From: Isurus oxyrinchus
Lineage: Eukaryota
NCBI GenBank assembly: GCA_026770705.1
Contig: JANJGN010000102.1
Location: 310,001-374,000, forward strand
Direction of reading: 5' to 3'
Length of the DNA stretch: 64,000 nucleotides
The stretch's first letter is position 1; the number at the start of each line of letters is the position of its first letter. Of this stretch, positions 3,453 through 62,040 are shown in pieces. The notes below the pieces were generated by a model, which saw nothing but the letters and a program-made list of their open reading frames with translations, had not been told where the DNA came from and ran no database searches. The translations under genes were made by a program, and so were the position numbers.

Positions 3453-5065
3453 AGGTACCTCACCAGTCCTACTCCGGCCCCCTTCCACAACTCTTTCTCC
3501 GGTACATCGATGATTACTTCGGTGCTGCTTCATGCTCTCGTCAGGACTTGGAAAAATTTATTAATTTTGCTTCCAATCTCCATCCCTCCATCATTTTCAC
3601 GTGGTCCATCTCTGACACTTCCCTTCCCTTCCTTGACCTCTCTGTCTCAATCTCTGGTGATAGACTATCCACCAATATCCATTACAAACCTACCGACTCC
3701 CACAGCTACCTCGATTACAGCTCCTCACACCCCGCTTCCTGTAAGGACTCCATCCCATTCTCCCAGTTCCTTCGCCTCCGTCGCATCTGTTCCAATGATG
3801 CTACCTTCAAAAACAGTTCCTCTGACATGTCCTCCTTCTTCCTTAACCGAGGTTTTCCCCCCACGGTCGTTGACAGGGCCCTCAACCATGTCTGGCCCAT
3901 CTCCCGCGCATCCGCCCTAACGCCTTCTCCTCCCTCCCAGAAACATGATAGGGTCCCCCTTGTCCTCATTTATCACCCCACCAGCCTCCGCATTCAAAGG
4001 ATCATCCTCCGCCATTTCCACCAACTCCAGCATGATGCCACCACCAAACACATCTTCCCTTCACCCCCCTTATCGGCATTCCATAGGGATCGTTCCCTCT
4101 GGGACACCCTGGTCCACTCCTCCATCACCCCCTACTCCTCAACCCCCTCCTATGGCACCACCCCATGCCCACGCAAAAGATGTAACACCTGCCCCTTCAC
4201 TTCCTCTCTCCTCACCATCCAAGGGCCCAAACACTCCTTTCAAGTGAAGCAGCATTTCACTTGCATTTCCCCCAACTTAGTCTACTGCATTCATTGCTCC
4301 CAATGTGGTCTCCTCTACATTGGAGAGACCAAATGTAAACTGGGCGACCGCTTTGCAGAACACCTGCGGTCTGTCTGCAAGAATGACCCAAACCTCCCTG
4401 TCGCTTGCCATTTTAACACTCCACCCTGCTCTCTTGCCCACATGTCTGTCCTTGGCTTGCTGCATTGTTCCAGTGAAGCCCAACGCAAACTGGAGGAACA
4501 ACACCTCATCTTCCGACTAGGCACTTTACAGCCTTCCGGACTGAATATTGAGTTTAACAACTTTAGGTCTTGAACTCCCTCCTCCATCCCCACCCCCTTT
4601 CTGTTTCTTCCCCCTTCCTTTTGTTTCTTCCAATAAATTATATAGATTTTTCTTTTCCCACCTATTTCCATTATTTTTAAATATTTTAAAATCTTTTATG
4701 CTCCCCCCACCCCCACTAGAGCTATACCTTCCATTCTTAATTAGCACATTCATTTCGATAATGTCACCAACTTCAACACCTGTGTTCTTTTGTTCTGTTG
4801 TCTGTGACATCGTTTGATGATCTGCTTCTATCACTGCTTGTTTGTCCCTACAACCACACCACCCCAACCCCGCCACCACACACACACACACCTTAAACCA
4901 ACTTATATTTCACCCCTTCCTTGGATTCACCTAGTTCTGTTGAAGGGTCATGAGGACTCGAAACATCAACTCTTTTCTTATCCGCCGATGCTGCCAGACC
5001 TGCTGAGTTTTTCCAGGTAATTCTGTTTTTGTTTTGGATTTCCAGCATCCGCAGTTTTTTTGTTT
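3453..5065 (+). mobile_element. Penelope-like retroelement, 5'-truncated (RT C-terminus, GIY-YIG endonuclease, terminal tail)
   Basis: ORF 3548-4573 has NLVYCIHCSQCGLLYIGET...RFAEH (GIY-YIG) and ends PSGLN; RYIDD lies just upstream. 12-bp TSD TTACCTCACACT at 3441-3452 and 5066-5077. Confidence 0.93.
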
Positions 5066-5459
5066 TTACCTCACACTTCTCTGGTTTAAATTCCATTTGC
5101 CACTTCTCTGCCCACTAAACCAAACTTTCTTTTGCCAATCGCCTTAAATCTGTCTCCTCTGGTTCTCGATCCTTCCACCAAGTTTCTCCCTATCTACTCT
5201 GTCCCAGGCCCTTCATGATTTTCAAAGTGGAATTGTTATATTTTATCATAAGATATTCCAAACCATCTTTGATTAATAAGCTAAAGCATGAATGTCTGAA
5301 TATGACTGATTGCACCTATGCTATTTACTTTATTAACTACAATAGCTGAGGGAACACAATATTTCACTTAATATCCAAAGCACATATTCTGCTTGGGCTT
5401 GCCAGTGTGCAAATAAATCATCGCAATTGAATTCCTTGGTGCAACGTTTCTTGTATACG

Positions 5460-9385: not shown

Positions 9386-11488
9386 AAAACAAAAACAGAA
9401 TTATCTGGAAAAACTCTGCAGGTCTGGCAGCATCGGCGGAGAAGAAAAGAGTTGATGTTTCGAGTCCTCATGACCCTTCGACAGAACTTGAGTTCGAGTC
9501 CAAGTAACAGCTGAAATATAAGCTGGTTTAAGGTGTGTGTGTGGGGGGGCGGAGAGATAGAGAGAGAGAGAGAGGTTTGGGGGGGGTGTGGTTGTGTGGA
9601 CAAACAAGCAGTGATAGAAGCAGATCATCAAAAGATGTCAACGACAATGGTACAATAGAACACATAGGTGTTAAAGTTAAAGTTGGTGATATTATCTAAA
9701 CAAATGTGCTAATTAAGAATGGATGGTAGGGCACTCAAGGTACAGCTCTAGTGGGGGTGTTTTTTTTTATAATGGAAATAGGTGGGAAAAGGAAAATCTT
9801 TATAATTTATTGGAAAAAAAAGGAAGGGGGAAACAGAAAGGGGGTGGGGATGGGGGAGGGAGCTCACGACCTAAAGTTGTTGAATTCAATATTCAGTCCG
9901 GAAGGCTGTAAGGTGCCTAGTCGGAAGATGAGGTGTTGTTCCTCCAGTTTGCGTTGGGCTTCACTGAAACAATGCAGCAAGCCAAGGACAGACATGTGGG
10001 CAAGAGAGCAGGGTGGAGTGTTAAAATGGCAAGCGACAGGGAGGTTTGGGTCATTCTTGCGGACAGACCGCAGGTGTTCTGCAAAGCGGTCGCCCAGTTT
10101 ACGTTTGGTCTCTCCAATGTAGAGGAGACCACATTGGGAGCAACGAATGCAGTAGACTAAGTTGGGGGAAATGCAAGTGAAATGCTGCTTCACTTGAAAG
10201 AAGTGTTTGGGCCCTTGGACGGTGAGGAGAAAGGAAATGAAGGGGCAGGTGTTACATCTTTTGCGTGGGCATGGGGTGGTGCCATAGGAGGGGGTTGAGG
10301 AGTAGGGGGTGATGGAGGAGTGGACCAGGGTGTCCCGGAGGGAGCGATCCCTATGGAATGCCGATAAGGGGGGTGAAGGGAAGATGTGTTTGGTGGTGGC
10401 ATCATGCTGGAGTTGGCGGAAATGGCGGAGGATGATCCTTTGAATGCGGAGGCTGGTGGGGTGATAAGTGAGGACAAGGGGGACCCTATCATGTTTCTGG
10501 GAGGGAGGAGAAGGCGTGAGGGCGGATGCGTGGGAGATGGGCTGGACACGGTTGAGGGCCCTGTCAACGACCGTGGGTGGAACACCTCGGTTAAGGAAGA
10601 AGGAGGACATGTCAGAGGAACTGTTTTTGAAGGTGGCATCATCAGAACTGATGCGATGGAGGCGAAGGAACTGAGAGAATGGAATGGAGTCCTTACAGGA
10701 AGCGGGGTGTGAGGAGCTGTAGTCGAGGTAGCTGTGGGAGTCGGTGGGTTTGTAATGGATATTGGTGGACAGTCTATCACCAGAGATTGAGACAGAGAGG
10801 TCAAGGAAGGGAAGGGAAGTGTCAGAGATGGACCACGTGAAAATGATAGAGGGGTGGAGATTGGAAGCAAAATTAATAAATTTTTCCAAGTCCCGACGAG
10901 AGCATGAAGCGGCACCGAAGTAATCATCGATGTACCGGAGAAAAAGTTGTGGAAGGGGGCCGGAGTAGAACTGCAACAAGGAATGTTCCACATACCCCAT
11001 AAAGAGACAGGCATAGCTGGGGCACATGCGGGTACCCATAGCCACACCTTTTATTTGGAGGAAGTGAGAGGAGTTGAAGGAGAAATTGTTCAGCGTGAAA
11101 ACAAGTTCAGCCAGACGGAGGAGAGTAGTAGTGGATGGGGATTGTTCGGGCCTCTGTTCGAGGAAGAAGCTAAGGGCCCTCAGACCATCCTGGTGGGGGA
11201 TGGAGGTGTAGAGGGATTGGACGTCCATGGTGAAGAGGAAGCGGTTGGGGCCAGGGAACTGGAAATTGTTGATGTGATGTAAGGTGTCAGAGGAATCATG
11301 GATGTAGGTGGGAAAGGACTGGACAAGGGAGAGAGAAGGGAGTCAAGATAACGAGAAATGAGTTCTGTGGGGCAGGAGCAAGCTGAGACGATCGGTCTAC
11401 CGGGGCAGTTCTGTTTGTGGATTTTGGGTAGGAGATAGAAGCGGGCCGTCCAAGGTTGGGCGACTATCAGGTTGGAAGCTGTGGGAGA
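9386..11488 (-). mobile_element. Penelope-like retroelement, 5'-truncated (RT, GIY-YIG, tail)
   Basis: ORF 9864-11228 with [24 protein letters not shown] and the GIY-YIG block. 15-bp TSD TAGGTGGAGATAGGT at 9371-9385 and 11489-11503. Confidence 0.95.
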
Positions 11489-20542: not shown

Positions 20543-20814
20543 GTAAATCGATTTAATTGTCTCTGGGGGCGGATATCTCTGACCTTCCAGCCAAACAAAT
20601 TGCTGAGAAATGGGTTTCTCTCCAAACTCCTCTTTGTTAATGAACTATGCTCAGCACCGGCAACAATCAGCACAGGAGAAATTAAACTGTTCACGGTGGA
20701 ATGAGTTTGAGGTTGTTTGTATTGATTACTCAAATCTCACACCAAACTGCATGGGGTAGGGTAAAACTTGAATGAGACCAGTAAAGAACTCTGTTCTCAG
20801 TTGAAAATTTGTTG

Positions 20815-22628
20815 GGGACGGTGTAGAGGGAGCTTTACTCTGTATCTAACCCCGTGCTGTACCTGTCCTGGGAGTGTTTGATGGGGACGGTGTGGAGGGA
20901 GCTTTACTCTGTATCTAATCCCGTGCTGTACCTGTCCTGGGAGTGTTTGATGGGGACAGTGTAGAGGGAGCTTTACTCTGTATCTAACCCTGTGCTATAC
21001 CTGTCCTGGGAGTGTTTGATGGGGACAGTGTAGAGGGCGCTTTACTTTGTATCTAACTCCGTGCTGTACCTGTCCTGAGAGTGTTTGATGGGGATGGTGT
21101 AGAGGGAGCTTTACTCTGTATCTAACCCTGTGCTGTACCTGTCCTGGGAGTGTTTGATGGGGACAGTGTAGAGGGAGCTTTACTCTGTATCTAACCCCGT
21201 GCTGTACCTGTCTTGGGAGTTTGATGGGGACAGTGCCCCATGCTGTACCTGCCCTGGGAGCGTTTCATGGGGACAGTGTAAAGGGAGCTTTACTCTGTAT
21301 CTAACCCCGTGCTGTACCTGTCCTGGGAGTGTTTGATGGACACGGTGTAGAGGGAGTTTTAAACTTTATCAAAACCCGTGCTGTACCTGTCCTGGGAGTG
21401 TTTGATGGGGACGGCATTGAGGGAGCTTTACTCTGTATCTAACCCCATGCTGTACCTGCCCTGGGAGTGTTTGATGGGGACAGTGTAGACAGAGCTTTAC
21501 ACTGTATCTGACCCCATGCTGTACCTGTCCTGGGAGTGTTTGATGGGGACGGTGTGGAGGGAGCTTTACTCTGTATCTAATCCCATGCTGTACCTGTCCT
21601 GGGAGTGTTTGATGGGGACAGTGTAGAGGGAGCTTTACTCTGTATCTAACCCCGTGCTGTGCCTGTCCTGGGTGTGTTTGATGGAGACGGTGTAGAGGGA
21701 GCTTTACTCTGTATCTAACCCCGTGCTGTACCTGTCCTGGGAGTGTTTGATGGGGACAGTGTAGAGGGAGCTTTACTCTGTATCTAACCCCGTGCTGTAC
21801 CTGTCCTGGGAATGTTTCATGGGGACAGTGTAGAGGGAGCTTTACTCTGTATCTAACCCCGTGCTGTACCTGTCCTGGGAGTGTTTGATGGGGACGGTGT
21901 GGAGGGAGCTTTACTCTGTATCCTACTCCGTGCTGTACCTGTCTTGGGAGTGTTTGATGGGGACGGTGTGGAGGGAGCTTTACTCTGTATCTAATCCCAT
22001 GCTGTACCTGTCCTGGGAGTGTTTGATGGGGACAGTGTAGAGGGAGCTTTACTCTGTATCTAACCCCGTGCTGTGCCTGTCCTGGGTGTGTTTGATGGAG
22101 ACGGTGTAGAGGGAGCTTTACTCTGTATCTAACCCCGTGCTGTACCTGTCCTGGGAGTGTTTGATGGGGACAGTGTAGAGGGAGCTTTACTCTGTATCTA
22201 ATCCCGTGCTGTACCTGTCCTGGGAATGTTTCATGGGGACAGTGTAGAGGGAGCTTTACTCTGTATCTAACCCCGTGCTGTACCTGTCCTGGGAGTGTTT
22301 GATGGGGACGGTGTGGAGGGAGCTTTACTCTGTATCCTACCCCGTGCTGTACCTGTCTTGGGAGTGTTTGATGGGGACAGTGTAGAGGGAGCTTTACTCT
22401 GTATCTAACCCCGTGCTGTACCTGTCCTGGGTGTGTTTGATGGGGACGGTGTAGAGGGAGCTTTACTCTGTATCTAACCCTGTGCTGTACCTGTCCTGGG
22501 AGTGTTTGATGGGGACAGTGTAGAGGCAGCTTTATACCATATATAACCCCGTGCTGTACCTGTCCTGGGAGTGTTTCATGGGGACGGTGTAGAGAGAGCT
22601 TTACACTGTATCTAACCCTGTGCTTCAA
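20815..22628 (-). repeat. 69-bp satellite array (~26 units)
   Basis: Reverse complement of the unit at 1-901; source of the 23-aa-periodic ORF 21369-22628. Confidence 0.95.
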
Positions 22629-24826
22629 TACCCCTGGACTAAGGAGGCTTCAGACATCCTGGTTCCCTGATCTCCTTGCCAGTGAGCCCTATCCATTTGG
22701 GACAGTTTCGGTTTGGCTATAGTCCTACCTCCAAGGTCGATTAGCCTACCGAGATCTACCACATGCATGAAGAACAGCTGCCAGGGTGTGCTATCTGAGG
22801 CCCATGGAAACTACAGCCCTTAAAGCAGCAGGGGAGAACGGCGGGTGGGCAGAATATTGAATCTGATGGCTGGGTGCTCGGTTTGGCAGACACCCAGCAC
22901 TACAAATATCTTTTGTCACAAATAAGGTGGGGTCCAGGGATCAGCAAACCATACCTGCGGAGGAGCCACAGGACTCGATGCTGAATGGAGAAGGGGCACA
23001 AGATGAAGGGACCCGTGTGGATCGGAGTGATCCAAACCAACCAGCAGAATGTTGAGCCAATCTGTGTCCTAATCTGATTTCACACACACACTCTTGTTCC
23101 TCAAAACTGTGTTTCCTTCAAAAAAAATTACATAATTTCTGCAAACGTGATACTGTTTTATTGTTAATTTTNNNNNNNNNNNNNNNNNNNNNNNNNNNNN
23201 NNNNNNNNNNNNNNNNNNNNNNNNNNNNNNNNNNNNNNNNNNNNNNNNNNNNNNNNNNNNNNNNNNNNNNNNNNNNNNNNNNNNNNNNNNNNNNNNNNNN
23301 NNNNNNNNNNCTCTCTCCCTGCCACTTTGAGGTTTGAAAGCACTTCCTCATTCCAGGGATGAGGAACTTGAGTAACATAGAATCGTTGGCTGGCACAGCA
23401 CAGAAGGAGGTCATTCAGCTCATCGTGCCTGTGCTCTCTGTTTGAAAGAGTGGTCCAATTGGTCCCCTATTCTCCAAGGCTAAAATTTTTCCCCTTCAAG
23501 TATTTCTCCAATTCCCCCTTTTTGAGCGTGAATCTGCTTCCACTGCCCTTTCAGGCAGTGCCTTCCAGATAACAACTCGCTGCGTCAAAAAAATTCTCCT
23601 CATTTCCCCCTCTGGTTCTTCCACCGATTCTCTCCAATCTGTTTGCACCACCCAATCCACGCCCCCCCCCCCCCCCCACCCCCCCTCTGGTTACCGCCCC
23701 ACCTGCCACTGGAAACAGTTTCTCCTTATTTACTCAATTGAAACCTTTCATGATTTTGGATGCCTCGATTCAATCTCCCCTTTAACCTTCTCTGCACCAA
23801 GGAGAACAATCCCAGCTTCTCCAGTCCCTCCACATGAACTGAGGTCCCCTCATCCCCGGGAACCGTTCTGGTAAATCTCCTGTGCCTTCCCTGGTACAGG
23901 AGATGGTACTGAGGGAGTTCCGTGGATGGATTGGAGAAGTTGGGAGTGTTCTCCTTGGGAAGAGAAAGTTGAGAGGAGATTTGAAAGAGGTGTTCAAAAT
24001 CTCAAGAGGCTCTGGGACAGAGTAGATAGGGAGAAACTGTTCCCATTGGCGGAAGGATTGAAAACCAAAGGGACACAGATTTAAGGCGGTTGGTAAAAGA
24101 AGCAATGGGGACATGAGGAGAAACTTTTTCATGCAGTGAGTGGTTAGGATCTGGAATGTGCTGCCTGAGAATGTGGTGGAGGCAGGGTCAATCGAGGCTT
24201 TCCGAAGGGGAATTGGTTCATTATCTGAAAAGGAAGAATGTGCAGGGTTACGGGGAGAAGCCATGGGATGGCACCAGTTGAATTGCTCATGCAGAGAGCC
24301 AGTGCAGACACGATGAGCCAAATGGCTTGCTCCCCGTGACGTAGCAATTTGGTGATTCTGATTAACTGCCCAGAGATGCTCACATCTGTGGACGGCAGCT
24401 GAAGACTATGGTTGATTCTGCTGCCTTCACATGCGTTTTGAGCGCAGAGTCGAAGACCGAGAACATAGGAGGCCATTCAGCCCCTCAGGTCTATTCCCCC
24501 ATTCAACAAGATCACGGCTGATCTGTGACCTATATCCAGATACCCACCTTTGCCCCAAATCCCTTAATACCTTTGGCTAACAAAAATCTCTCAATCTCAG
24601 TTTAAAATTAACTGACCCGGCATTAATTGCCATTTGGTGAAGAGAGTTCCAAACTCCGACCACCCTTTGTGTGTCGAAGTCTTTCCTCATTTCACTCTCA
24701 TTTTTGGACTCTGCCCTCTCATCCCAGGCTTCCCCAACCAGCGGGAAACAGTTTCCCTCTGTCAACACTCTCAGTTCCCCTTAATGTCCTGAAAACTTTG
24801 ATTAAATCACTCCCTGAATCTTCTAA
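21488..24826 (+). repeat. Source segment of the inverted duplicate at 31910-35051
   Basis: Near-identical ORFs in opposite orientation (e.g. 23782-24321 vs 32415-32954). The diagnostic satellite variant at 21488-21520 matches 35019-35051. Confidence 0.93.
23172..23310. other. Assembly gap (139 N)
   Basis: N run; the equivalent position in the inverted copy holds a (CA)n microsatellite (~33431-33490). Confidence 0.98.
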
Positions 24827-31521: not shown

Positions 31522-31781
31522 GTAACATGTCTTGCCAGACAGCTTCTGCTATAGGTGGCTTTGGGGGAGTTGAGGAGGGCTAGGTGTGGTTAGGTTGGTT
31601 TGGTCACAGGACGAGCAGGAGTGGCTCAGTCACTGGGGCTGAAATGCTTCCCACTCGCATCTAGATTGCGCAGTCACTCAATGTCCTGCTGAGCAAACAG
31701 CATGTGGCCTCCCGGTATCAGCTACGGCTCAGTGTGTCAAAGGGTAGTGGGGTCAAGCCCCACCCAACACACAAAATCCAG

Positions 31782-33429
31782 AGATAAAAACAAAGAAAAC
31801 TGCGGATGCTGGAAATCCAAAACAAAAACAGAATTACCTGGAAAAACTCAGCAGGTCTGGCAGCATCGGCGGAGAAGAAAAGAGTTGACGTTTCGAGTCC
31901 TCATGACCCTTAGAAGATTCAGGGAGTGATTTAATCAAAGTTTTCAGGACATTAAGGGGAACTGAGAGTGTTGACAGAGGGAAACTGTTTCCCGCTGGTT
32001 GGGGAAGCCTGGGATGAGAGGGCAGAGTCCAAAAATGAGAGTGAAATGAGGAAAGACTTCTACACACAAAGGGTGGTCGGAGTTTAGAACTCTCTTCACC
32101 AAATGGCAATTAATGCCGGGTCAGTTAATTTTAAACTGAGATTGAGAGATTTTTGTTAGCCAAAGGTATTAAGGGATTTGGGGCAAAGGTGGGTATCTGG
32201 ATATAGGTCACAGATCAGCCGTGATCTTGTTGAATGGGGGAATAGACCTGAGGGGCTGAATGGCCTCCTATGTTCTCGGTCTTCGACTCTGCGCTCAAAA
32301 CGCATGTGAAGGCAGCAGAATCAACCATAGTCTTCAGCTGCCGTCCACAGATGTGAGCATCTCTGGGCAGTTAATCAGAATCACCGAATTGCTACGTCAC
32401 GGGGAGCAAGCCATTTGGCTCATCGTGTCTGCACTGGCTCTCCGCATGAGCAATTCAACTGGTGCCATCCCATGGCTTCTCCCCGTAACCCTGCACATTC
32501 TTCCTTTTCAGATAATGAACAAATTCCCCTTCGGAAAGCCTCGATTGACCCTGCCTCCACCACATTCTCAGGCAGCACATTCCAGATCCTAACCACTCAC
32601 TGCATGAAAAAGTTTCTCCTCATGTCCCCATTGCTTCTTTTACCAACCGCCTTAAATCTGTGTCCCTTTGGTTTTCAATCCTTCCGCCAATGGGAACAGT
32701 TTCTCCCTATCTACTCTGTCCCAGAGCCTCTTGAGATTTTGAACACCTCTTTCAAATCTCCTCTCAACTTTCTCTTCCCAAGGAGAACACTCCCAACTTC
32801 TCCAATCCATCCACGGAACTCCCTCAGTACCATCTCCTGTACCAGGGAAGGCACAGGAGATTTACCAGAAAGGTTCCCGGGGATGAGGGGACCTCAGTTC
32901 ATGTGGAGGGACTGGAGAAGCTGGGATTGTTCTCCTTGGTGCAGAGAAGGTTAAAGGGGAGATTGAATCGAGGCATCCAAAATCATGAAAGGTTTCAATT
33001 GAGTAAATAAGGAGAAACTGTTTCCAGTGGCAGGTGGGGCGGTAACCAGAGGGGGGGTGGTGGGAGGGGGTTCAAACAGATTGAAGAGAATCGGTAGAAG
33101 AACCAGAGGGGGAAATGAGGAGAATTTTTTTGATGCAGCGAGTTGTTGTGATCTGGAAGGCACTGCCTGAAAGGGCAGTGGTAGCAGATTCACGCTCAAA
33201 AAGGGGAAATTGAATAAATACTTGAAGGGGAAAAATTTTATCCATGGAGAATAGGGGACCAATTGGATGGCTCTTTCAAACAGAAAGCACAGGCACGATG
33301 AGCTGAATGACCTCCTTCTGTGCTGTGCCAGCCAACGATTCTATGTTACTCAAGTTCCTCATCCCTGGAATGAGGAAGTGCTTCCAAACCTCAAAGTGGC
33401 AGGGAGAGAGAGAAGGGCAGAATGTTAAA

Positions 33430-33479
<50 letters not shown>

Positions 33480-35145
33480 AAATACACACACTACTTACAA
33501 AGTCTAAAATTAACAATAAAACAGTATCACGTTTGCAGAAATTATGTAATTTTTTTTGAAGGAAACACAGTTTTGAGGAACAAGAGTGTGTGTGTGAGAT
33601 CAGATTAGGACACAGATTGGCTCAACGTTCTGCTGGTTGGTTTGGATCACTCCGATCCACACGGGTCCCTTCATCTTGTGCCCCTTCTCCATTCAGCATC
33701 GAGTCCTGTGGCTCCTCCGCAGGTATGGTTTGCTGATCCCTGGACCCCACCTTGTTTGTGACAAAAGATATTTGTAGTGCTGGGTGTCTGCCAAACCGAG
33801 CACCCAGCCATCAGATTCAATATTCTGCCCACCCGCCGTTCTCCCCTGCTGCTTTACGGGCTGTAGTTTCCATGGGCCTCAGATAGCACACCCTGGCAGC
33901 TGTTCTTCATGCATGTGGTAGATCTCGGTAGGCTAATCGACTTTGGAGGTAGCACGACAGCCAAACCGAAACTGTCCCAAATGGATAGGGCTCACTGGCA
34001 AAGAGATCAGGGAACCAGGATGTCTAAAGCCTCCTTAGTCCAGGGGTATTGAAGCACAGGGTTAGATACAGTGTAAAGCTCTCTCTACACCGTCCCCATG
34101 AAACACTCCCAGGACAGATACAGCACGGGGTTAGATACGGTATAGAGCTGCCTCTACACTGTCTCCATCAAACACTCCCAGAACAGGTACAGCACGGGGT
34201 TAGATACAGAGTAAAGCTCCCTCTACACCGTCCCCATCAAACACTCCCAGGACAGGTACAGCACGGGGTTAGATACAGAGTAAAGCTCCCTCTACACCAT
34301 CCCCATCAAACACACCCAGGACAGGTACAGCACGGGGTTAGATACAGAGTAAAGCTCCCTCTACACCGTCCCCATCAAACACTCCCAGGACAGGTACAGC
34401 ACGGGGTTAGATACAGAGTAAAGCTCCCTCTACACTGTCCCCATCAAACACTCCCAGGACAGGTACAGCACGGGGTTAGATACAGAGTAAAGCTCCCTCT
34501 ACACCGTCCCCATCAAACACTCCCAGGACAGGTACAGCACGGGGTTAGATACAGAGTAAAGCTCCCTCTACACCATCCCCATCAAACACACCCAGGACAG
34601 GTACAGCACGGGGTTAGATACAGAGTAAAGCTCCCTCTACACCGTCCCCATCAAACACTCCCAGGACAGGTACAGCACGGGGTTAGATACAGAGTAAAGC
34701 TCCCTCTACACCGTCCCCAACAAACACTCCCAGGACAGGTTCAGCACGGGGTTAGATACAGAGTAAAGCTCCCTCTACACCGTCCCCATGAAACATTCCT
34801 GGGACAGGTACAGCACGGGGTTACATACAGAGTAAAGCTCCCTCTACACTGTCCCCATCAAACACTCCCAGGACAGGTACAGCACGGGGTTAGATACAGA
34901 GTAAAGCTCCCTCTACACCGTCCCCATCAAACACACCCAGGACAGGTACAGCACGGGATTAGATACAGAGTAAAGCTCCCTCCACACCGTCCCCATCAAA
35001 CACTCCCAGGACAGGTACAGCATGGGGTCAGATACAGTGTAAAGCTCTGTCGAAGGGTCATGAGGACTCGAAACGTCAACTCTTTTCTTCTCCGCCGATG
35101 CTGCCAGACCTGCTGAGTTTTTCCAGGTAATTCTGTTTTTGTTTT
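31782..35145. mobile_element. Composite insertion: inverted Penelope tail, 3.1-kb captured genomic copy, Penelope tail; 13-bp TSD
   Basis: TSD ACACAAAATCCAG at 31769-31781 and 35146-35158. Tails at 31784-31911 (-) and 35046-35145 (+). The host SINE is split and resumes after the TSD. Confidence 0.88.
34049..35051 (+). repeat. 69-bp satellite array inside the captured segment
   Basis: Direct inspection. Confidence 0.95.
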
Positions 35146-35174
35146 ACACAAAATCCAGGCTGACTCTTCTATTG

Positions 35175-35825
35175 CAGTACTGTCGGATGGTCAGTGTTGA
35201 GGGAGAGCCGCACTGTCGGATGGTCAGGACTCACGGAGTGCCGCACTGTCGGAGGGTCAGTACTGAGGGAGCGCCGCACTGTCGGAGGGTCAGTACTGAG
35301 GGAGCGCCACACGGTTGGAAGGTCAGCGCTGAGGGAGCGTCACACTGTTGGAGGATCAGTACTGAGGAAGCGCCGCACTGTGGGAGGGTCAGTGCTGAGG
35401 GAGCGCCGCACTGTCGGAGGGTCAGTGCTGAGGGAGCGCCGCACTGTCGGAGGGTCAGTGCTGAGGGAGCGCCGCACTGTCGGAGGGTCAGTGCTGAGGG
35501 AGTGCCGCACTATCGGAGGGTTAGTACTGAGGGTACACCACACTGTCAGAGGGTCAGTACTGAGGGAGCACCACACTGTCGGAGGGCCAGTACTGAGGGA
35601 GCTCCGCCCTGTCGGTGGGCCAGTGGTCAGTACTGAGGGAGTGCCATACTGTTGGATGGTCAGTGCTGAGGGAGCGCAGCATTGTCAGAGGGTTAGTGCT
35701 GAGGGAGTGCCGCACTGTCGGAGGGTCAGTGCTGAGGGAGTGCTGCACTGTCGGAGGGTTAGTGCTGAGGGAGTGCCGCATTGTCGGAGGGTTAGTGCTG
35801 AGGGAGTGCCGCACTGTCAGAGGTG
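35175..35825 (+). repeat. 30-bp minisatellite (GTCAGTACTGAGGGAGCGCCGCACTGTCGGAGG-like) expanded from a SINE body
   Basis: About 21 units directly following the resumed SINE sequence. Confidence 0.9.
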
Positions 35826-36297: not shown

Positions 36298-36522
36298 GGG
36301 GACGGTGTAGAGGGAGTTTTGCTCAGTATCTAACCCCGTGCTGTACCTGTCCTGGGAGTGTTTGATGGGGACTGTGTAGAGGGAGCTTTACTCTGTATCT
36401 AACCCCGTGCTGTACCTGTCCTGGGAGTGTTTGATGGGGACGGTGTAGAGGGAGCTTTACTCTGTATCTAACCCTGTGCTGTACCTGTCCTGGGAATGTT
36501 TGATGGGGACAGTGTAGAGGCA
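36298..36522 (-). repeat. 69-bp satellite, ~3 units
   Basis: Direct inspection. Confidence 0.9.
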
Positions 36523-37059: not shown

Positions 37060-37188
37060 GGTTCTGAAGAAGAGTCATACGGACTCAAAACGTTCACTCT
37101 GTTTTTCTCTCCACAAAAACTGCTGATTTTTCCAGCACTTTTTGTTTTCGTTTCAGATTTCCAGCATCACCAGTATTATGCCTTTATC
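37060..37188 (+). mobile_element. Solo Penelope tail (older subfamily)
   Basis: CTGAAGAAGAGTCATACGGACTCAAAACGTT... homologous to the tails at 4935-5065 and 61330-61470. Confidence 0.7.
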
Positions 37189-37189
37189 A

Positions 37190-39800
37190 AATGAGGACAT
37201 ATGGGTAGAAGTAAAACACAAAAGGGGCAAACACACTTTTGGGTGTGTACTATAGGCCCACAAAGAGTCAGGCCGAGATAGAGGATCAAATATGCAATCA
37301 AATTTCAGAGAAGTGTAAGAATAATAAGGCAGTAATAGTGGGGGATTTTAACTACCCAAATATTAACCAGGATAGTTTTAGTGTGCAAGGTAAGGAGGGA
37401 GCAAAATTCTTAAGTTGCATCCAGGAGAAACTTTTTAGCCAGTACATAGAAAGCCCAACAAGGAAGGGAGCAGTTCTGGACCTAATATTCGGAAATTAGC
37501 CTGGGCAGATGGAAGGCATATCAGTAATGGAGCATTTTGGAGATAATGACCATAACTCAGTTAGATTTAGGATAGTTATGGAAAAGGATAAGGTTGGGCC
37601 TGGAATAAAAGTTCTAAATTGGGGAAATGCTAATTTTAATAAGATGAGATACAATTTGGCACAAGTGGACTGGGAGCAGCTACTTGCAGATAAAACTGTG
37701 TCAGAGTAGTGGAAGGCATTCAAGGAGAAAATAGTGAGAGTACAAGGCAAATATGTTCCCGTAAAGATAAAGAGGGGCTCTAAGTCTGAAGAATGCTGGA
37801 TGTCAAGGGACATAAAGGTTAGGATTAAGAGAAAAAGAGAAGCTTATGGCAGATACTGAGGGCTCAATATGGCAGAGTCCCAAGAGGAGTATAAAAAGTG
37901 CAAGGGGAACTTAATGGAAACTACGAAAGCTAAGAAAGTGCATGAGAAAGCATTGATGGGTAGAGTAAAGGAAAACCCAAAGGGGTTTTTTAAATAGATA
38001 AAGAGCAATAGAATAACTAGGGGAAGAGTAGGGTTAATTAGGGACCATGGAGGTAATCTATGTGTGGACCCGGAAGATGCGGGTACAGTCCTCAATGAAT
38101 ACTTTGCGTCGGTCTTCACAATGGAAAAGGACGATGCAGGTATAGACATCAGGGTGGAGGAATGTGAAATATTAGAGGAAATTAACATAGAGAGAGAGGA
38201 GGTGCTTGTGGGTTTAGCGGCCTTAAAAGTGGATATATCCACAGGCCCGGATGAGATGTATCCCAGGCTGCTGAGGGAGGCAAGGGAAGTGATATCAGGG
38301 GCCCTGGCAGTAATTTTCAATTACTCTCTGGCCACAGGTGAGGTGCCGGAGGATTGAAGGATTGCTAACGTTATCCCATTATTGAAAAAGGAAGGAAGGG
38401 ATAGACTAGGAAATTACAGGCCAGCCAGTCTAACCTCTGTGGTGGAGAAGTTACTAGAAAGAATTCTGAGGGACAAAATATATCTGCACTTGGAGAGAGA
38501 CGGATTAATCAGGGATAGTCAGCATGGATTTGTTAAGGAAGGTCATGTTTGACAAATTTGATCTAATTTTTTGAGGAGGTAACCAGGAGTGTTGATGAGG
38601 GTAATGCATTTGATGTGGTCTACATGGACTTTAGCAAGGCTTTTGATAAGGTCCCTCATGGCACACTGGTCAAGAAAGTAAGAGCCTATGGGATCCAAGG
38701 CAAAGTGGCACATTGGATCCAAAATTGGCTGAGAGGCAGGAAGCAGAGGGTGATGTTAGAGGGATGTTTCTGTTACTGGAAGTCTGTTTCCAGTGGGATT
38801 CTGCAGGACTCAGTGCTGGGGCCCTTGCTGTTTGTGATGTACATAAATGATTTGGACTTAAATGTAGGGGCTATGATGAAGAAGTTCATGGATGACGTGA
38901 AAATTGGTAGGGTGGTAAATAGTGAGGAGGATAGCCATAAACTGCAGGAGGATATCAATGGTCAGGTCAGGTGGGCAGAGCAGTGACAAATGGAATTCAA
39001 CCTGGAAAAGTGTGAACGAATGCACATGGGGAGGGCTAACAAGGCGAGGGATTACACTATGAATGGTAGGATCCTGGAAAGTACTGAAGATCAGAGGGAT
39101 CTTGATGTGCATATCCAGGGATTCCTGAAGGTAGCAGGGCAGGTAGATAAGGTGGTTAAGAAAGCATATGGGATACTTGCAATTATTAGTCGAGGCGTAG
39201 AAGAGCCAGGAGGTTATGCTGGAACTGTACGAAATGCTGGTCAGGCCACAATTGAGTACTGTGTGCAGTTCTGGCCACCACATTATAGGAAGGATATGAT
39301 TGCACTGGAGAGGGTACAGAGGAGATTTACCGGGATGCCACCTGGGCTGGAGGGTCTGAGCTATGAGGAAAGATTGTATAGGCTGGTGTTGTTTCCCTTG
39401 GAGCAGCGATGTTTGAGGGGGGACCTGATAGAGGTGTATAAGATTATGAGGGGCATAGATAGGGGGGACAGGAAAGCACTTTTTCCATTAGTAGAGGGGT
39501 CAATAACCAGGGGGCATAGATTTAAGGTAAGAGGTAGAAGAGTAAGAGGCGAGCTGAGGTGAAATTTTTTCACCCAGAGGTTGGTGGAAGTCTGGAACTC
39601 ACTGCCTGAAAGGGTGGTTGACTCAGAAATGCTCATAACATTTAAGAAGTATTTAGATATTCACTTGCATTGCCATGGCCTGCAGGGTCATGGGCCAAGC
39701 GCTGGAAAATGGAATTAGTGTAGTCAGATCTTTGTTGACCAGCATGGACACGATGGGCCAAATGGCTTCCTTCTGTGCAGTAAAAGTCTATGAGTCTATG
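37190..39800 (+). mobile_element. CR1 LINE, most of ORF2 (APE C-terminal half and RT) plus 3' UTR, with stops and frameshifts
   Basis: GVYYRP, IVGDFNYPNI, VLDLIF, YMDFSKAFDKVPH, FMDD, FFTQRLVEVWNSLP; (CTATGAGT)n-type tail. Confidence 0.95.
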
Positions 39801-43800: not shown

Positions 43801-44354
43801 ACCTCAGCATTCTGATGCTAAGATTCAGCTCCAGTTTCTTTGATGTTAAAACATCCTTCATTTTGACAAAGCCGATCTTGGTTCTCTCAATTTTCCTTCG
43901 GACCTCACAATCTCATCTCCCAACGCCTGTGATAATCTGCTCAAGATGCATGAACCTTTTCTCTTTTTAAAAATTCTTTCATGGTGTCACTGGCTAGCCC
44001 AGCATTTATTGCCCATCCCTAATTGCCCCTTGAGAAGGTGGTGGTGAGCTGACTCTTAAGCCGCTGCAGTCCATGTGGTGTAGGTACACTCACCATGCTG
44101 TTAGGGAGAGGGTTCCAGGATTTTGACCCAGCGACAGTGAACAAAGGGCCAATGTATTTCCAAGTCAGGATGGTGTGTGTGGCTCGGAGGAGAACTTCCA
44201 GGCGCTGCTGTTCCCATGCGTTTGCTGCTCTTGTCCTTCGAGGTGATGGAGGTTGTGGGTTTGGAAGATTCTGGGGGAGGAGGGTGAGCGGGGCAAGTGG
44301 GGAACTTCACACATGCGTGCAAGTGCACACTGGAAAAGCTCCCTGAGGCACAGA

Positions 44355-44665
44355 GATAAAAACAAAAAACTGCGGATGCTGGAAATCCAAAACAAAAACA
44401 GAATTACCTGGAAAAACTCAGCAGGTCTGGCAGCATCGGCGGAGAAGAAGAGTTGACATTTCGAATCCTCATGACCCTTCAACAGAACTGAGTGAATCTA
44501 AGGAGAGGGGTGAAATATAGTTCTGTCGAAGGGTCATGAGGACTCGAAACGTCAACTCTTTTCTTCTCCGCCGATGCTGCCAGACCTGCTGAGTTTTTCC
44601 AGGTAATTCTGTTTTTGTTTTGGGTGAAATATAAGCTGGTTTAAGGTGGGGGCTGGGGGGGTTGG
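44355..44665. mobile_element. Penelope tail (-) with a second tail (+, 44520-44621) inserted in it
   Basis: 12-bp duplication GGGTGAAATATA at 44508-44519 and 44622-44633. Confidence 0.85.
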
Positions 44666-59209: not shown

Positions 59210-62040
59210 ATTGGAGAAGCTGGGACTGTTCTCCTTGGAGAAAAGGAGGTTGAGAGGAGATTTGATCGAGGTGTTCAAAATCACGAGGAGTCTGGGACAG
59301 AGCAGATAGGGAGAAACTGTTCCCATTGGCGGAAGGATCGAGAACCAGAGGGACACGGATTTAAGGCGATTGGTAAAAGAAGCAAGGTAGATACGAGAAG
59401 GAATTTTTTCACGCATCAAGTGGTTAGGGAATGCACTGCCTGAGAGTGTGGGGGAGGCAGGGTGAATGAGAGCTTTCAAAAGGCAGTTAGGTCATTATTT
59501 GGAAAGGAAGAATGTGCAGGGTTACAGGGAGAGGACGGGGGAATGGCACTGGATGAGTTGCTCATTTGGAGAGCCAGTGCAGATAGGATGGGCTGAAAGG
59601 CCTCCTTCTGCGCTGTTACAATGCTGTGATCCTGCGATAATCTCCTGGCTCACATTCTGCACAAGGAGTACCAGCTTCTGTCTTCAATCGAGGTCCTGAG
59701 GATGACAAGTGAGAAGTGGACTTTACACAGGAGGCGTCTCTCTTGTTGGGGAACAAGGAACAAGAATCCTGCTTTATTAGAAAATCACTGGCACCTGGAG
59801 TCTGTGATCATCTCCTCCCCATGACTTTAATCCCAATCTGCTGCTTGCTCCCCTGATCTTGTGCCCTCATTCTAGATTCCCCCACAAGGGGGAAACATCC
59901 TGTCAGCATCTACCCTGTCAAACCCCCCTGGCTTCAGATTCTGATTTGTTTCAATAAAATCACCTCTCATTCTTCTAAACTGCAATGGGCACAGGCCCAA
60001 CCGGCTGAACTTTTCCCCATAAGACAAACCTCTGATCCCAGGAATCAACCAAGTGAAGCTTCTCTGAACTACTTCCAATGAACATACCCCACCTTAAATA
60101 AGGAGACCAAAACTGTACACAGTACTCCAGGTGCGGTCTCACCAATGCTCTGTACAGTTGCAGCAAGATTTCCCTACTTTTATACTCTATCCCTCCTCGC
60201 AATAAATGCTAACCTTCCATTTGCCTTCCTAATCACTTGCTGCACTTGCGTACTAACTTCTGATTCATGCATTCATCACAGAACCTGCTGATTCAAGTAT
60301 TTGTCATTACAGTAAAGGGTGGGGGGCATCATATTCAGTGCTAATACTTGAATGTGTCAATGGGAGACATCTATACACAATTTTTCGACCCTCCCTTTGT
60401 GCATCATGTCCATCTTGTGACGTTCTTTCCTGTGAAGGGATACATTTTCTGAAGGAAGGAGGCGGAGAGACAGTATAAAATAAAGGGTACAATTCTATAG
60501 TGGGTACAGGAGCAGAGGGACGAGGGTGTATATGTGCATAAATCATTGAAGGTGGCAGGACAGGTTGAAAGAGCTGTTTCCAAAGTATATCGTATCCTTG
60601 GCTTTATTAAGAGGGGCATAGAGTATAAGAGCAAGGAGGTTATGCTGAATTTATACAAGACACTCGGTTAGACCTCAGCTGGAGTATATATGGATGCCAC
60701 ATCATAGGAAGGATGTGAACACAAAGAGAGTGCAGACGAAGTTTACAAGAATGGGTGTTTCAGGAATAAAAAACTTCAGCTAATGAGGATAGATTGGAGA
60801 GGTTGGGACTGTTCTCTTTGGAGAGAAGGCTGGGAGGAGATTTGATAGAGAGGTTCAAAACCATGAGGGGGCTGGACAGAGTAGATTGGGAGAAGCTGTT
60901 CCCACTCGTAAAAGGATCAAGAACAAGAGGGCACAGATTTAAAGGAAACAAGCGTGATGTGAGAAATAAACTTTTTCACATGGCGAGTGGTTCGGGTCTG
61001 GAATGCACTGCCTAGAAGTGTGGTGGAGGCAGGCTCAGTCGAGGCATTCAAGAGGGCATTAAATGGTTATTTGAATAGAAATAATGTGGAAGGGTATGGG
61101 GAAAAGGCAGGGCAATGGCACTAGGTCATAATGCTCATTTGGAGCGCTAGCGCAGACACGATGGGCCGAATGGCCTCCTTCTGTGCCATTAAGATTCTGT
61201 GATTGTGTGGTGTAGATAAGTTATTGAAGGTGACAGGACAGGTTGAGAGAATGGTTAATAAAGCAAGGAGTGTCCTAGGCTTCATTAATCGGGGCATACA
61301 GAACAAAAACAATGAGGTTATGGTAAAAAGATAAAAGCAAAATACTGCGGATGCTGGAAATCTGAAACAAAAACAGAAAATGCTGCAAAAACTCAGCAGG
61401 TCTGACAGCATCTGTGGAGAGAGAAAAACAAAGTTAATGTTTCAAGTCCGTATGACCCTTCTTCAGAGCAGAGGTTATGATAAACTTGCATAAAACACTA
61501 GTTCAGCCTCAGCTGGAGTATTGTGTCCAGTTCTGGGTGCTGCACTATATGAAGGATGTGAAGGCTTTAGAGAGAAAGAGAGAGAGAGAGTGAGTGCGGC
61601 AAAGATTCAAAAGAATGGTTCCAGGGATGAGGGACTTTGGTTCCATAGACAGATTGGAGAAGTTGGGACTGTTCTCCTTGGAGTAAAGGAGGTTGAGAGG
61701 AGATTTTTTGGAGGTGTTCAAAATCACGAGGGGTCTGGGACAGAGTAGATGGGAAGAAACTGCTCCCAGTGGCGGAAGGATCAAGAACTAGAGGGACACT
61801 GATTTAAGGCGATTGGTAAAAGAAGCAACGGAGATGTGAGGAGAAACTTTTTCACACAGCGAGTGGTTAGGATCTGGAATGCGCTGCCCAAGAGTGTGGG
61901 GGAGGCAGGGTCAATTGAGACTTTCAAAAAGGAATTGGGGAATGGACAGGGCACTGGCACTGGGTGATTTGTTCTTGCATTGAGCCACCACAGACATAAT
62001 GGGCCAAATGGCCTCCTTCTGTACTGTCACTATTCAGTGA
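59210..62040. mobile_element. Cluster of CR1 3' fragments (both strands) with a solo Penelope tail at ~61330-61470 (-)
   Basis: Repeated LGLFSLE.RRLRGDLIE and RPHLEYCVQFW blocks. Confidence 0.88.

What the first reader, a model, noticed from the sequence alone, without database searches (positions are those of the whole stretch)
31769..35158. Penelope-mediated capture: 3.1 kb of nearby genomic DNA copied between two inverted Penelope tails with a TSD
Seen: TSD ACACAAAATCCAG, then a Penelope tail (-, 31784-31911), an inverted copy of 21488-24826 (satellite, unique DNA, CR1 pieces, part of gene X exon A), a Penelope tail (+, 35046-35145) and the TSD again. The whole unit splits a SINE. Both junctions fall within the hammerhead-like motif and show microhomology with the source (TT on the left, TCTGTC on the right, matching a variant satellite unit at 21488-21493). 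The source has no such Penelope tail at either end, so this is not ordinary read-through transduction. Inference: the Penelope RT or repair synthesis switched template onto a locus ~7 kb away (DNA or unspliced RNA) and back. That would be a route to local inverted duplication and exon shuffling; I do not know whether it has been described in vertebrates.
Basis: partly seen in the sequence, partly recalled or inferred. Interest (0 to 1): 0.85.

Follow-up and report, generated by a model that had tools for sequence, protein, structure and literature searches.

The report
Retroelement insertion that copied nearby DNA
A shark Penelope-like retrotransposon insertion consists of two short outward-facing element ends, bounded by one 13-base target duplication, that enclose a 3.1 kb inverted copy of DNA lying 7 kb away; it shows that this element type can make local inverted duplications in a vertebrate, as was already seen in rotifers.

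Summary
The core observation holds at the stated coordinates. ACACAAAATCCAG occurs only twice in the window, at 31769-31781 and 35146-35158. It brackets a minus-strand Penelope-like (PLE) end (31782-31911), an inverted copy of 21488-24826, and a plus-strand PLE end (35046-35145).

The junctions share TT (left) and TCTGTC (right) with the donor. TCTGTC occurs in only one unit of the donor satellite. No PLE end adjoins the donor, so this is not transduction.

The frame matches published PLE features. These are an inverted 5'-truncated arm, a 30-40 bp "tail" at one end only (here 37 nt, left), and in vitro cutting and extension of both DNA strands from two RT start sites.

My preferred reading (about 0.55) is one integration event. 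Both nicks primed short cDNAs, and one cDNA end switched by microhomology onto nearby DNA or RNA before joining the other. A two-step history cannot be excluded: a hairpin-shaped insert, later broken at its apex and filled (about 0.25).

Three side claims were not supported. Rfam finds no hammerhead. No coding domain was found in the cargo. The split SINE could not be verified.

Foreign sequence captured between PLE repeats within a TSD is published for bdelloid rotifers, so this is a new variant of a known kind. Other first-reader notes of this scan list similar PLE "sandwiches" in this genome; I did not check them.

The parts
31769..31781 (.). Left copy of the 13-bp target-site duplication ACACAAAATCCAG
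   Evidence: only two copies in the window, each abutting an arm's 3' end
31782..31818 (-). 37-nt 3' extension (the PLE 'tail' in the sense of Arkhipova and colleagues), present on the left arm only. It corresponds to the stretch between the two RT start sites.
   Evidence: three copies end at GTTTTTGTTTT and three carry this extra 37-38 nt; compare PMC11167929 and PMC8557442
31819..31911 (-). Left PLE arm core (AAGGGTCATGAGG...GTTTTTGTTTT, reverse-complemented). Its 5' end is at the cargo junction, and 31910-31911 (TT) is shared with the donor.
31912..35045 (+). Cargo: an inverted copy of donor 24824-21494. It holds CR1-like LINE pieces, unique DNA and 14.4 units of a 69-bp satellite. The stretch 33411-33505 lies opposite the donor's N run and was left aside.
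35046..35051 (+). TCTGTC, a 6-nt microhomology shared by the donor satellite unit (21488-21493) and the element sequence AGTTCTGTCGAAGGG
35052..35145 (+). Right PLE arm core (GAAGGGTCATGAGG...GTTTTTGTTTT), ending at the inner RT start site with no extension
35146..35158 (.). Right copy of the TSD
21488..24826 (-). Donor locus, 6.9-10.3 kb upstream of the insertion site, including the microhomology bases at both ends. It has an N run at 23172-23310 and no PLE end at either boundary.
9386..11228 (-). Reference long copy of the same PLE family. Its ORF 9864-11228 has RT and GIY-YIG domains, followed by a 3' region that ends in the same arm sequence.

Best explanation
This is a single Penelope-like element (PLE) integration that went astray.

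1. The element's GIY-YIG endonuclease made nicks 13 bp apart in the target.
2. Both 3'-OH ends primed reverse transcription on PLE RNA. One started at the outer RT start site (left arm, with the 37-nt extension) and the other at the inner site (right arm).
3. Each cDNA ran only about 95-130 nt, to or near a preferred 5' end of the template (AGTTCTGTC...). I infer this to be the RNA 5' end, because long copies have a TATA-like box 29-32 nt upstream and an initiator-like CAGTTC there.
4. Normally such ends jump to the cognate template or to each other. Here the right-hand cDNA end (...GACAGA-3') annealed to the only TCTGTC-bearing unit of a satellite 10 kb away.
5. It was then extended for 3.1 kb along that locus, either as single-stranded DNA or as a local transcript.
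6. It finally joined the left-hand cDNA at a TT microhomology.

Shown: the anatomy, the junction sequences, the element's family and the absence of a PLE end at the donor. Inferred: that it was one event, the order of the switches, the polymerase involved, and whether the donor was DNA or RNA.
For: - One exact 13-bp TSD brackets the whole unit and abuts both arms' 3' ends. Neither arm has a TSD of its own.
- The arms are identical over their shared 93 nt.
- The 3' ends fall into two classes 37 nt apart, and only one end carries the extension. This is the published PLE hallmark (PMC8557442, PMC3846280) and corresponds to the two RT start sites of the anole PLE. That enzyme cuts and extends both strands in vitro (PMC11167929).
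- Both junctions show microhomology, and the 6-nt one uses the single donor satellite unit that carries TCTGTC.
- There are no untemplated bases at either junction, and no loss from the right arm's usual 5' end. The nested arm at 44521 and an older solo arm at 61329 begin at the same homologous position.
- No PLE end lies at the donor.
- Contigs from elsewhere in the genome join minus-strand arms to plus-strand arms, so head-to-head arm pairs are common there (table 5).
Against: - There is only one locus, and no empty-site allele or orthologue was secured. In one search, organism-B contigs leave the alignment at 31768 with 60 unplaced letters. That fits either an empty site or a slightly diverged arm.
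- A two-step history gives the same final sequence.
- Copy-donor divergence is uneven: 0.5%, 4.9% next to the N run, 1.8%, and 3.4% in the satellite. Dating the duplication against the arms is therefore weak.
- The transcription-start reading of the arms' 5' end rests on motif inspection of three copies only.
- No PLE reverse transcriptase has been shown to copy 3 kb of foreign template.
Confidence: 0.55

Rival explanations
1. Two steps. A cargo-free, hairpin-shaped PLE insert (two outward-facing arms inside one TSD) landed first. Later the palindrome broke at its apex, and the break was repaired by microhomology-mediated, replication-type synthesis (MMBIR/FoSTeS-like) templated on DNA 7-10 kb away.
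For: - Head-to-head arm pairs exist at many other loci (table 5).
- Microhomology of 2 and 6 nt and a nearby inverted template are typical of replication-based templated insertions (established knowledge).
- The cargo sits exactly between the two arms' 5' ends.
Against: - No bases appear to be lost from the arms at the apex, whereas broken palindromes are usually resected.
- The 6-nt microhomology uses the very end of the right arm, as expected for a nascent cDNA 3' end.
- It needs two rare events at one spot.
Confidence: 0.25
2. Two independent PLE insertions happen to flank a pre-existing inverted segmental duplication, and the 13-bp repeat is a coincidence.
For: PLE ends are very abundant in this genome, with depths in the millions, table 2.
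Against: - An exact 13/13 repeat abuts both arms' 3' ends. The word occurs nowhere else in the window, and 0 of 100 shuffles gave two copies.
- Neither arm has its own TSD.
- Homology to the donor stops exactly at the arms.
- The arms are identical to each other.
Confidence: 0.03
3. Assembly artefact: a haplotype or chimeric-read mis-join created the second copy.
For: The donor contains an assembly gap or mask (N run 23172-23310), and divergence rises next to it. The short-read contigs laid do not visibly bridge the arm-cargo junctions.
Against: - A mis-join would not produce two PLE arms with a one-sided extension and an exact TSD, nor microhomology junctions.
- The copies differ by 0.5-1.8% plus indels, and they lie 7 kb apart in inverted order.
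- In run X1, one contig carries donor-type letters and leaves the alignment exactly at 31910. Another carries the copy-type letter at 32386.
Confidence: 0.05
4. Transduction or mobilisation of a pre-formed composite: an RNA that already contained arm-cargo-arm, or cargo next to a PLE end, was retrotransposed.
For: Genes framed by PLE repeats were mobilised in trans in Adineta vaga (PMC3846280).
Against: - No PLE end adjoins the donor on either side.
- The only copy of the cargo lies 7 kb from its donor.
- Depth in the less repetitive cargo bins is close to that of the unique left flank, so the composite does not appear to be amplified (table 2).
Confidence: 0.05

Closest known systems
[quoted passage not shown]
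   Same: Non-element DNA is framed by PLE terminal repeats and the whole unit is flanked by one TSD. [quoted passage not shown] They also invoke template jumps.
   Different: - The rotifer case is an invertebrate. Its best example has two direct pLTRs plus one inverted pLTR and was read as mobilisation in trans.
- Donors were not located next to the insert, and no junction microhomology with a donor was reported in the passages read.
- Here there are only two short inverted arms. The donor is identified 7 kb away in cis, without PLE ends, and both switch points are readable.
Canonical PLE insertion architecture, and the in vitro behaviour of the Anolis PLE 'PAc' (PMC8557442; Frangieh et al. 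2024, PMC11167929)
   Same: An inverted 5'-truncated copy lies at one end, with a TSD and a 30-40 bp 'tail' at one end only. Both DNA strands are cut and extended, and there are two internal RT start sites with the tail between them. Here the 3' ends fall 37 nt apart and the extension is one-sided.
   Different: Published descriptions have element sequence between the arms, not 3.1 kb of foreign DNA. No hammerhead was detectable here with Rfam models.
L1 twin priming with template switching, and L1-associated local rearrangements (Ostertag and Kazazian 2001; PMC11702581)
   Same: Both target 3' ends prime cDNA, a discrete TSD is preserved, junctions show microhomology, and a middle segment comes from a template switch. 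Local inverted duplications at the target have been reported.
   Different: - The enzyme family differs: APE-type endonuclease LINE versus GIY-YIG PLE.
- In L1 the second priming is internal and microhomology-driven. Here both arms start at fixed RT start sites.
- L1 middle segments are usually other RNAs, not a 3-kb unspliced piece of neighbouring DNA.
Replication-based templated insertions (FoSTeS/MMBIR)
   Same: The donor is nearby and copied in inverted orientation, with 2-6 nt microhomology at entry and exit and no loss of the donor.
   Different: Those events are not bounded by retroelement cDNA arms and a TSD. Here the invading 3' ends would be nascent cDNAs.

Membership tests
Endonuclease-containing Penelope-like element (the family the arms belong to) | Single ORF with a reverse transcriptase followed by a C-terminal GIY-YIG endonuclease | tested here: met
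   ORF 9864-11228(-) lies upstream of the same arm sequence. It hits RVT_1 (E 1.8e-4) and then GIY-YIG (E 3.8e-4), both just under Pfam's cut-offs. Homologues at E 1e-136 to 1e-195 pass both cut-offs. The YIDD motif is visible.
Endonuclease-containing Penelope-like element (the family the arms belong to) | [quoted passage not shown] | tested here: met
   The translation reads LVYCIRCSQCGLLYIGET.
Endonuclease-containing Penelope-like element (the family the arms belong to) | Hammerhead ribozyme motif in the terminal repeat | tested here: inconclusive
   No Rfam hammerhead family hit at gathering score over the window, or at E<=10 on 4700-5200 and 31560-31930. By eye, only the blocks ...AUGAG... 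and CGAAAC-GUC resemble the core.
Canonical PLE insertion signature | Inverted 5'-truncated copy at one end, with the whole unit inside one TSD | tested here: met
   A minus-strand arm at 31782-31911 and a plus-strand arm at 35046-35145 lie inside the 13-bp TSD.
Canonical PLE insertion signature | 30-40 bp 'tail' extension at only one end | tested here: met
   A 37-nt extension is at 31782-31818 only. Six copies in the window fall into two 3'-end classes.
Canonical PLE insertion signature | Partial tandem (pseudo-LTR) arrangement with element body between the ends | tested here: not met
   Only the two arms are element sequence. Everything between them matches the donor locus.
PLE-framed capture of host DNA (as in Adineta vaga) | Non-element DNA between PLE terminal repeats, flanked by one TSD | tested here: met
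PLE-framed capture of host DNA (as in Adineta vaga) | Empty site with a single TSD copy in an allele or relative | tested here: inconclusive
   In one search, organism-B contigs follow the left flank to 31768 and then carry 60 letters that were not placed.
Retroelement 3'/5' transduction | A source element directly adjoining the transduced DNA at its original locus | tested here: not met
   No arm-like sequence lies at 21488 or 24826. The nearest are at 9386-9478 and 37120-37168.
L1-type twin priming | Two oppositely oriented cDNA segments of one RNA inside a discrete TSD | tested here: met
   The element is not a LINE, so this is a likeness in how it works, not family membership.
MMBIR/FoSTeS templated insertion | Microhomology at both junctions with a nearby template | tested here: met
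   TT and TCTGTC. The donor is 6.9-10.3 kb away and inverted.
MMBIR/FoSTeS templated insertion | Dependence on replication or a DNA (not RNA) template | not testable with these tools
   The cargo has no intron or poly(A) mark that could tell RNA from DNA.

The most novel reading that the evidence does not exclude
Template jumping after a short run-off cDNA may be an inherent step of PLE integration, with internal initiation about 100 nt from the RNA 5' end followed by a strong-stop-like transfer. If so, its mis-targeting to nearby chromosomal DNA would be a recurrent source of local inverted segmental duplications in shark genomes, including the MHC W-category region where this one lies.
Probability: 0.25. 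Interest if true: 0.75.

Novelty: new variant of a known kind. Interest (0 to 1): 0.5.

Why it matters
How Penelope-like elements integrate is still largely unknown. The first biochemical work (2024) showed that both target strands are extended from two internal start sites, but not how the two ends are resolved.

This locus is a natural record of that resolution step going wrong. Both arms, both start sites, both switch points and the donor can be read in one 14-kb stretch.

It shows that in a vertebrate a PLE integration can duplicate several kilobases of neighbouring DNA in inverted orientation. Such duplications could seed further rearrangement by providing inverted repeats 7 kb apart inside an MHC gene cluster.

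It also gives a concrete search pattern for a genome-wide test: outward-facing arms, a 12-14 bp TSD and a foreign middle.

Tried and rejected
- Rfam, whole window at gathering score and two sub-regions at E<=10: no hammerhead and no SINE or tRNA family.
- ARAGORN on the left flank: no tRNA-like head called.
- Search for a second SINE copy spanning the insertion site, to rebuild the empty site: none in the window. The one weak pattern match at 38518 is unrelated. From memory, the continuity CACAAAA(A)TCYAGGCTGAC matches the common shark tRNA-derived SINE, but this was not tested.
- Read laying (single call, four runs of short-read contigs): the arms are so repetitive that junction-bridging pieces were not listed.
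  - It showed a donor-type contig leaving the alignment at 31910 and a left-flank contig ending at 31781 in run X1.
  - It also showed organism-B contigs leaving at 31768. Presence or absence of the insert in organism B stayed unresolved.
- The tool skipped 33423-33492 as a repeat.
- Pfam on six cargo or donor-flank ORFs: nothing, so the 'exon' claim is unsupported.
- RNA fold of the arm: no better than shuffles, z = 0.63.
- A-to-G or G-to-A bias between copy and donor, as a mark of RNA editing or cDNA deamination: 9 versus 5, not significant.
The best protein relatives are only 60-67% identical, so they belong to other families.
- Bacterial promoter/terminator scan: not applicable and empty.
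Full report
**What is there.**
- The word ACACAAAATCCAG stands at 31769-31781 and 35146-35158 and nowhere else in the 64-kb window. None of 100 shuffles gave two copies.
- Directly inside the left copy lies a 130-nt retroelement end on the minus strand (31782-31911). Directly inside the right copy lies a 100-nt end of the same element on the plus strand (35046-35145).
- Both ends therefore point outward with their 3' termini against the duplication.
- Over the shared 93 nt the two arms are identical to each other and to a third young copy at 44521-44613.

**The cargo and its donor.**
- Everything between the arms (31912-35045) is the reverse complement of 24824-21494. That locus lies 6.9 to 10.3 kb upstream.
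- Identity is 98.5% over 31910-33410 and 98.2% over 33506-34052.
- Divergence is uneven: 0.5% in the first 1.15 kb, 4.9% in the 350 nt next to the donor's N run, and 1.8% beyond it. An 18-nt and a 3-nt indel also separate the copies.
- The 69-bp satellite part aligns at 96.6% once two clean one-unit (69-nt) gaps are allowed, and it ends at donor position 21488.
- The donor has 139 N at 23172-23310. I did not fill them or read them from the copy.
- The cargo consists of CR1-like LINE pieces, unique DNA and satellite. None of its ORFs has a Pfam domain, so I could not confirm that part of an exon was copied.

**The junctions.**
- On the left, the arm ends ...CCTCATGACCCTT and the cargo goes on AGAAGATT. 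The donor reads ...AATTT AGAAGATT, so TT is shared.
- On the right, the cargo ends ...GTAAAGC, followed by TCTGTC and then GAAGGGTCATGAGG.
- The donor unit at 21488-21498 reads AAAGCTCTGTC, where the other satellite units read AAAGCTCCCTC. This word occurs only there and at the junction.
This makes it a true 6-nt microhomology between element and donor.
- There are no untemplated bases at either junction.
- No element end lies at either donor boundary, which excludes read-through transduction.

**The element is Penelope-like.**
- Two longer copies in the window carry the same end behind about 0.8 kb of shared sequence.
- One of them follows an ORF (9864-11228, minus strand) with a reverse-transcriptase match and then a GIY-YIG match. 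It also has a YIDD motif and the string VYCIRCSQCGLLYIGET. [quoted passage not shown]
- Its relatives in sharks, rays and many invertebrates (E down to 1e-198) pass Pfam's cut-offs for both domains.

**The frame is the ordinary PLE signature.**
- The six copies of this end in the window stop at one of two points 37-38 nt apart: after GTTTTTGTTTT, or after ...TTTGTTTTTATCT.
- In the finding, only the left arm has the extra 37 nt.
- The literature describes exactly this: an inverted 5'-truncated copy at one end, a TSD around the unit, and a 30-40 bp 'tail' often present at one end only (PMC8557442 and PMC3846280).
- Frangieh et al. 2024 (PMC11167929) showed that a purified Anolis PLE protein cuts and extends both target strands, unlike R2 and L1.
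- They also showed that reverse transcription starts at two adjacent internal sites, and that the 'tail' is the sequence between them.
- The shark locus reads as that reaction fossilised: two cDNAs, one from each nick, one started at each site.

**Where the arms end.**
- The right arm begins at (T)CTGTC. The nested solo arm at 44521 begins at GTTCTGTC, inside a 12-nt TSD GGGTGAAATATA. An older-family solo arm at 61329-61460 begins at the homologous GCTCTGAA.
- In one search (tables 5 and 5c), contigs from other loci join a minus-strand arm to a plus-strand arm, and some begin AGT-TCTGTC.
- In the three long copies this point is preceded at 29-32 nt by TTATATTT. In two of the three it sits in an initiator-like YCAGTTC (read directly).
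[quoted passage not shown] This is inference from motifs, not a test.
- In the anole element the RT start sites also lie only about 110 nt into the unit.
- The 'hammerhead-like' label could not be supported. No Rfam hammerhead model matches, even at E<=10, and the arm folds no better than shuffles.

**Most likely mechanism.**
- I read this as one integration event (confidence about 0.55).
- Nicks 13 bp apart were made in the target, and both 3' ends primed cDNA.
- The right-hand cDNA reached the template's 5' end. Instead of jumping to its proper acceptor or to the other cDNA, it paired through six bases with the one TCTGTC-bearing satellite unit nearby.
- It was then extended for 3.1 kb and joined the left-hand cDNA at TT.
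- Which end invaded first, which polymerase did the long synthesis, and whether the donor was single-stranded DNA or a local transcript are all open. The cargo carries no splice or poly(A) mark.
- The cis-proximal, inverted donor resembles replication-type template switching. RNA donors would resemble L1 chimeras and the twin-priming-plus-switch insertions seen experimentally (PMC11702581).

**Rivals.**
- Two-step history (about 0.25): a cargo-free hairpin insert first, then a break at its apex filled from the neighbouring locus. It yields the same sequence and fits the abundance of head-to-head arm pairs. It requires two rare events at one point with no resection.
- Coincidental flanking insertions (0.03), assembly artefact (0.05) and mobilisation of a pre-formed composite (0.05) are each contradicted. 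The evidence against them is the exact TSD, the identical arms, the sharp homology limits, the lack of a PLE end at the donor and the unamplified depth.

**Reads.**
- The single read-laying run used short-read contigs of one run of organism A and three runs of organism B.
- In run X1 (organism A, possibly the assembly's own sample), a 460-nt contig carries the donor's letters at 32061 and 32086 and leaves the alignment exactly at 31910. This is the donor's flank.
- In the same run, a 259-nt contig carries the copy's G at 32386 at about twice flank depth, and a left-flank contig ends exactly at 31781.
- Organism-B contigs follow the left flank to 31768 and then carry 60 letters that were not placed. 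This fits an empty site (TSD plus 47 nt of right flank), but it equally fits a slightly different arm.
- Many cargo bins are high-copy LINE sequence, so perfect matches there are not locus-specific.
- The reads therefore neither prove nor disprove the structure in a second genome.

**Comparison with what is known.**
- The closest precedent is Adineta vaga. [quoted passage not shown]
- This locus differs in four ways. It is in a vertebrate. It has only two short inverted arms. Its donor is identified in cis and lacks any PLE end. Both switch points show microhomology.
- These differences favour template switching at integration over mobilisation of a pre-existing composite.
- My literature searches found no vertebrate case. 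The library does not cover all journals.
- First-reader notes of this scan list further tails-out PLE inserts and cargo 'sandwiches' elsewhere in this genome. I could not inspect them, and they are not counted as evidence.

**Verdict.** This is a new variant of a known kind, with moderate interest (0.5). It is an informative single locus rather than a new class of mechanism. A genome-wide scan and an empty-site test would raise or lower that score quickly.

Noticed in passing
window 44354-44640: A nested insertion. A 93-nt plus-strand PLE arm (44521-44613, starting GTTCTGTC and ending GTTTTTGTTTT) sits inside the body of a minus-strand copy of the same family, flanked by a 12-nt TSD GGGTGAAATATA. 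It shows that the short arm inserts on its own.
   Followed up: partly
window 3464-5068 (+) and 9386-10973 (-): Two longer copies of the same PLE family face each other, tails inward, 4.3 kb apart. They are 96% complementary over 1159 nt. The minus-strand copy keeps a 454-codon RT plus GIY-YIG ORF. Whether they are separate insertions or another inverted duplication was not examined.
   Followed up: partly
window 61329-61460: A solo arm of an older, roughly 82%-similar PLE family, inserted into a LINE with a TSD of about 9 nt (GAGGTTATG). Its 5' end is at the same homologous position as the young arms.
   Followed up: partly
window 35179-35823: A 33-bp satellite of 19 units starts about 20 nt after the right TSD copy. 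It appears to derive from the body of the SINE-like sequence that the insertion interrupts.
   Followed up: no
window 23311-23710 versus 33030-33410: Differences between copy and donor cluster in the 350 nt next to the donor's N run: 17 mismatches, an 18-nt gap in a G-run and a 3-nt gap. Most are G in the donor where the copy has A or T. This may be lower assembly quality beside the gap rather than real divergence.
   Followed up: partly
window 20808-22624, 34053-35047, 36298-36500 and 1-903: The same 69-bp satellite occurs in at least four arrays in the window. The array at 36298 onward lies only 1.1 kb from the insertion, in the donor's orientation.
   Followed up: no
long PLE copies at window 4890-4945, 9479-9545 and 44480-44640: TTATATTT lies 29-32 nt upstream of an initiator-like (C/T)(C/T)AGTTC, exactly where the short arms begin. 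This may be the element's promoter and transcription start.
   Followed up: partly
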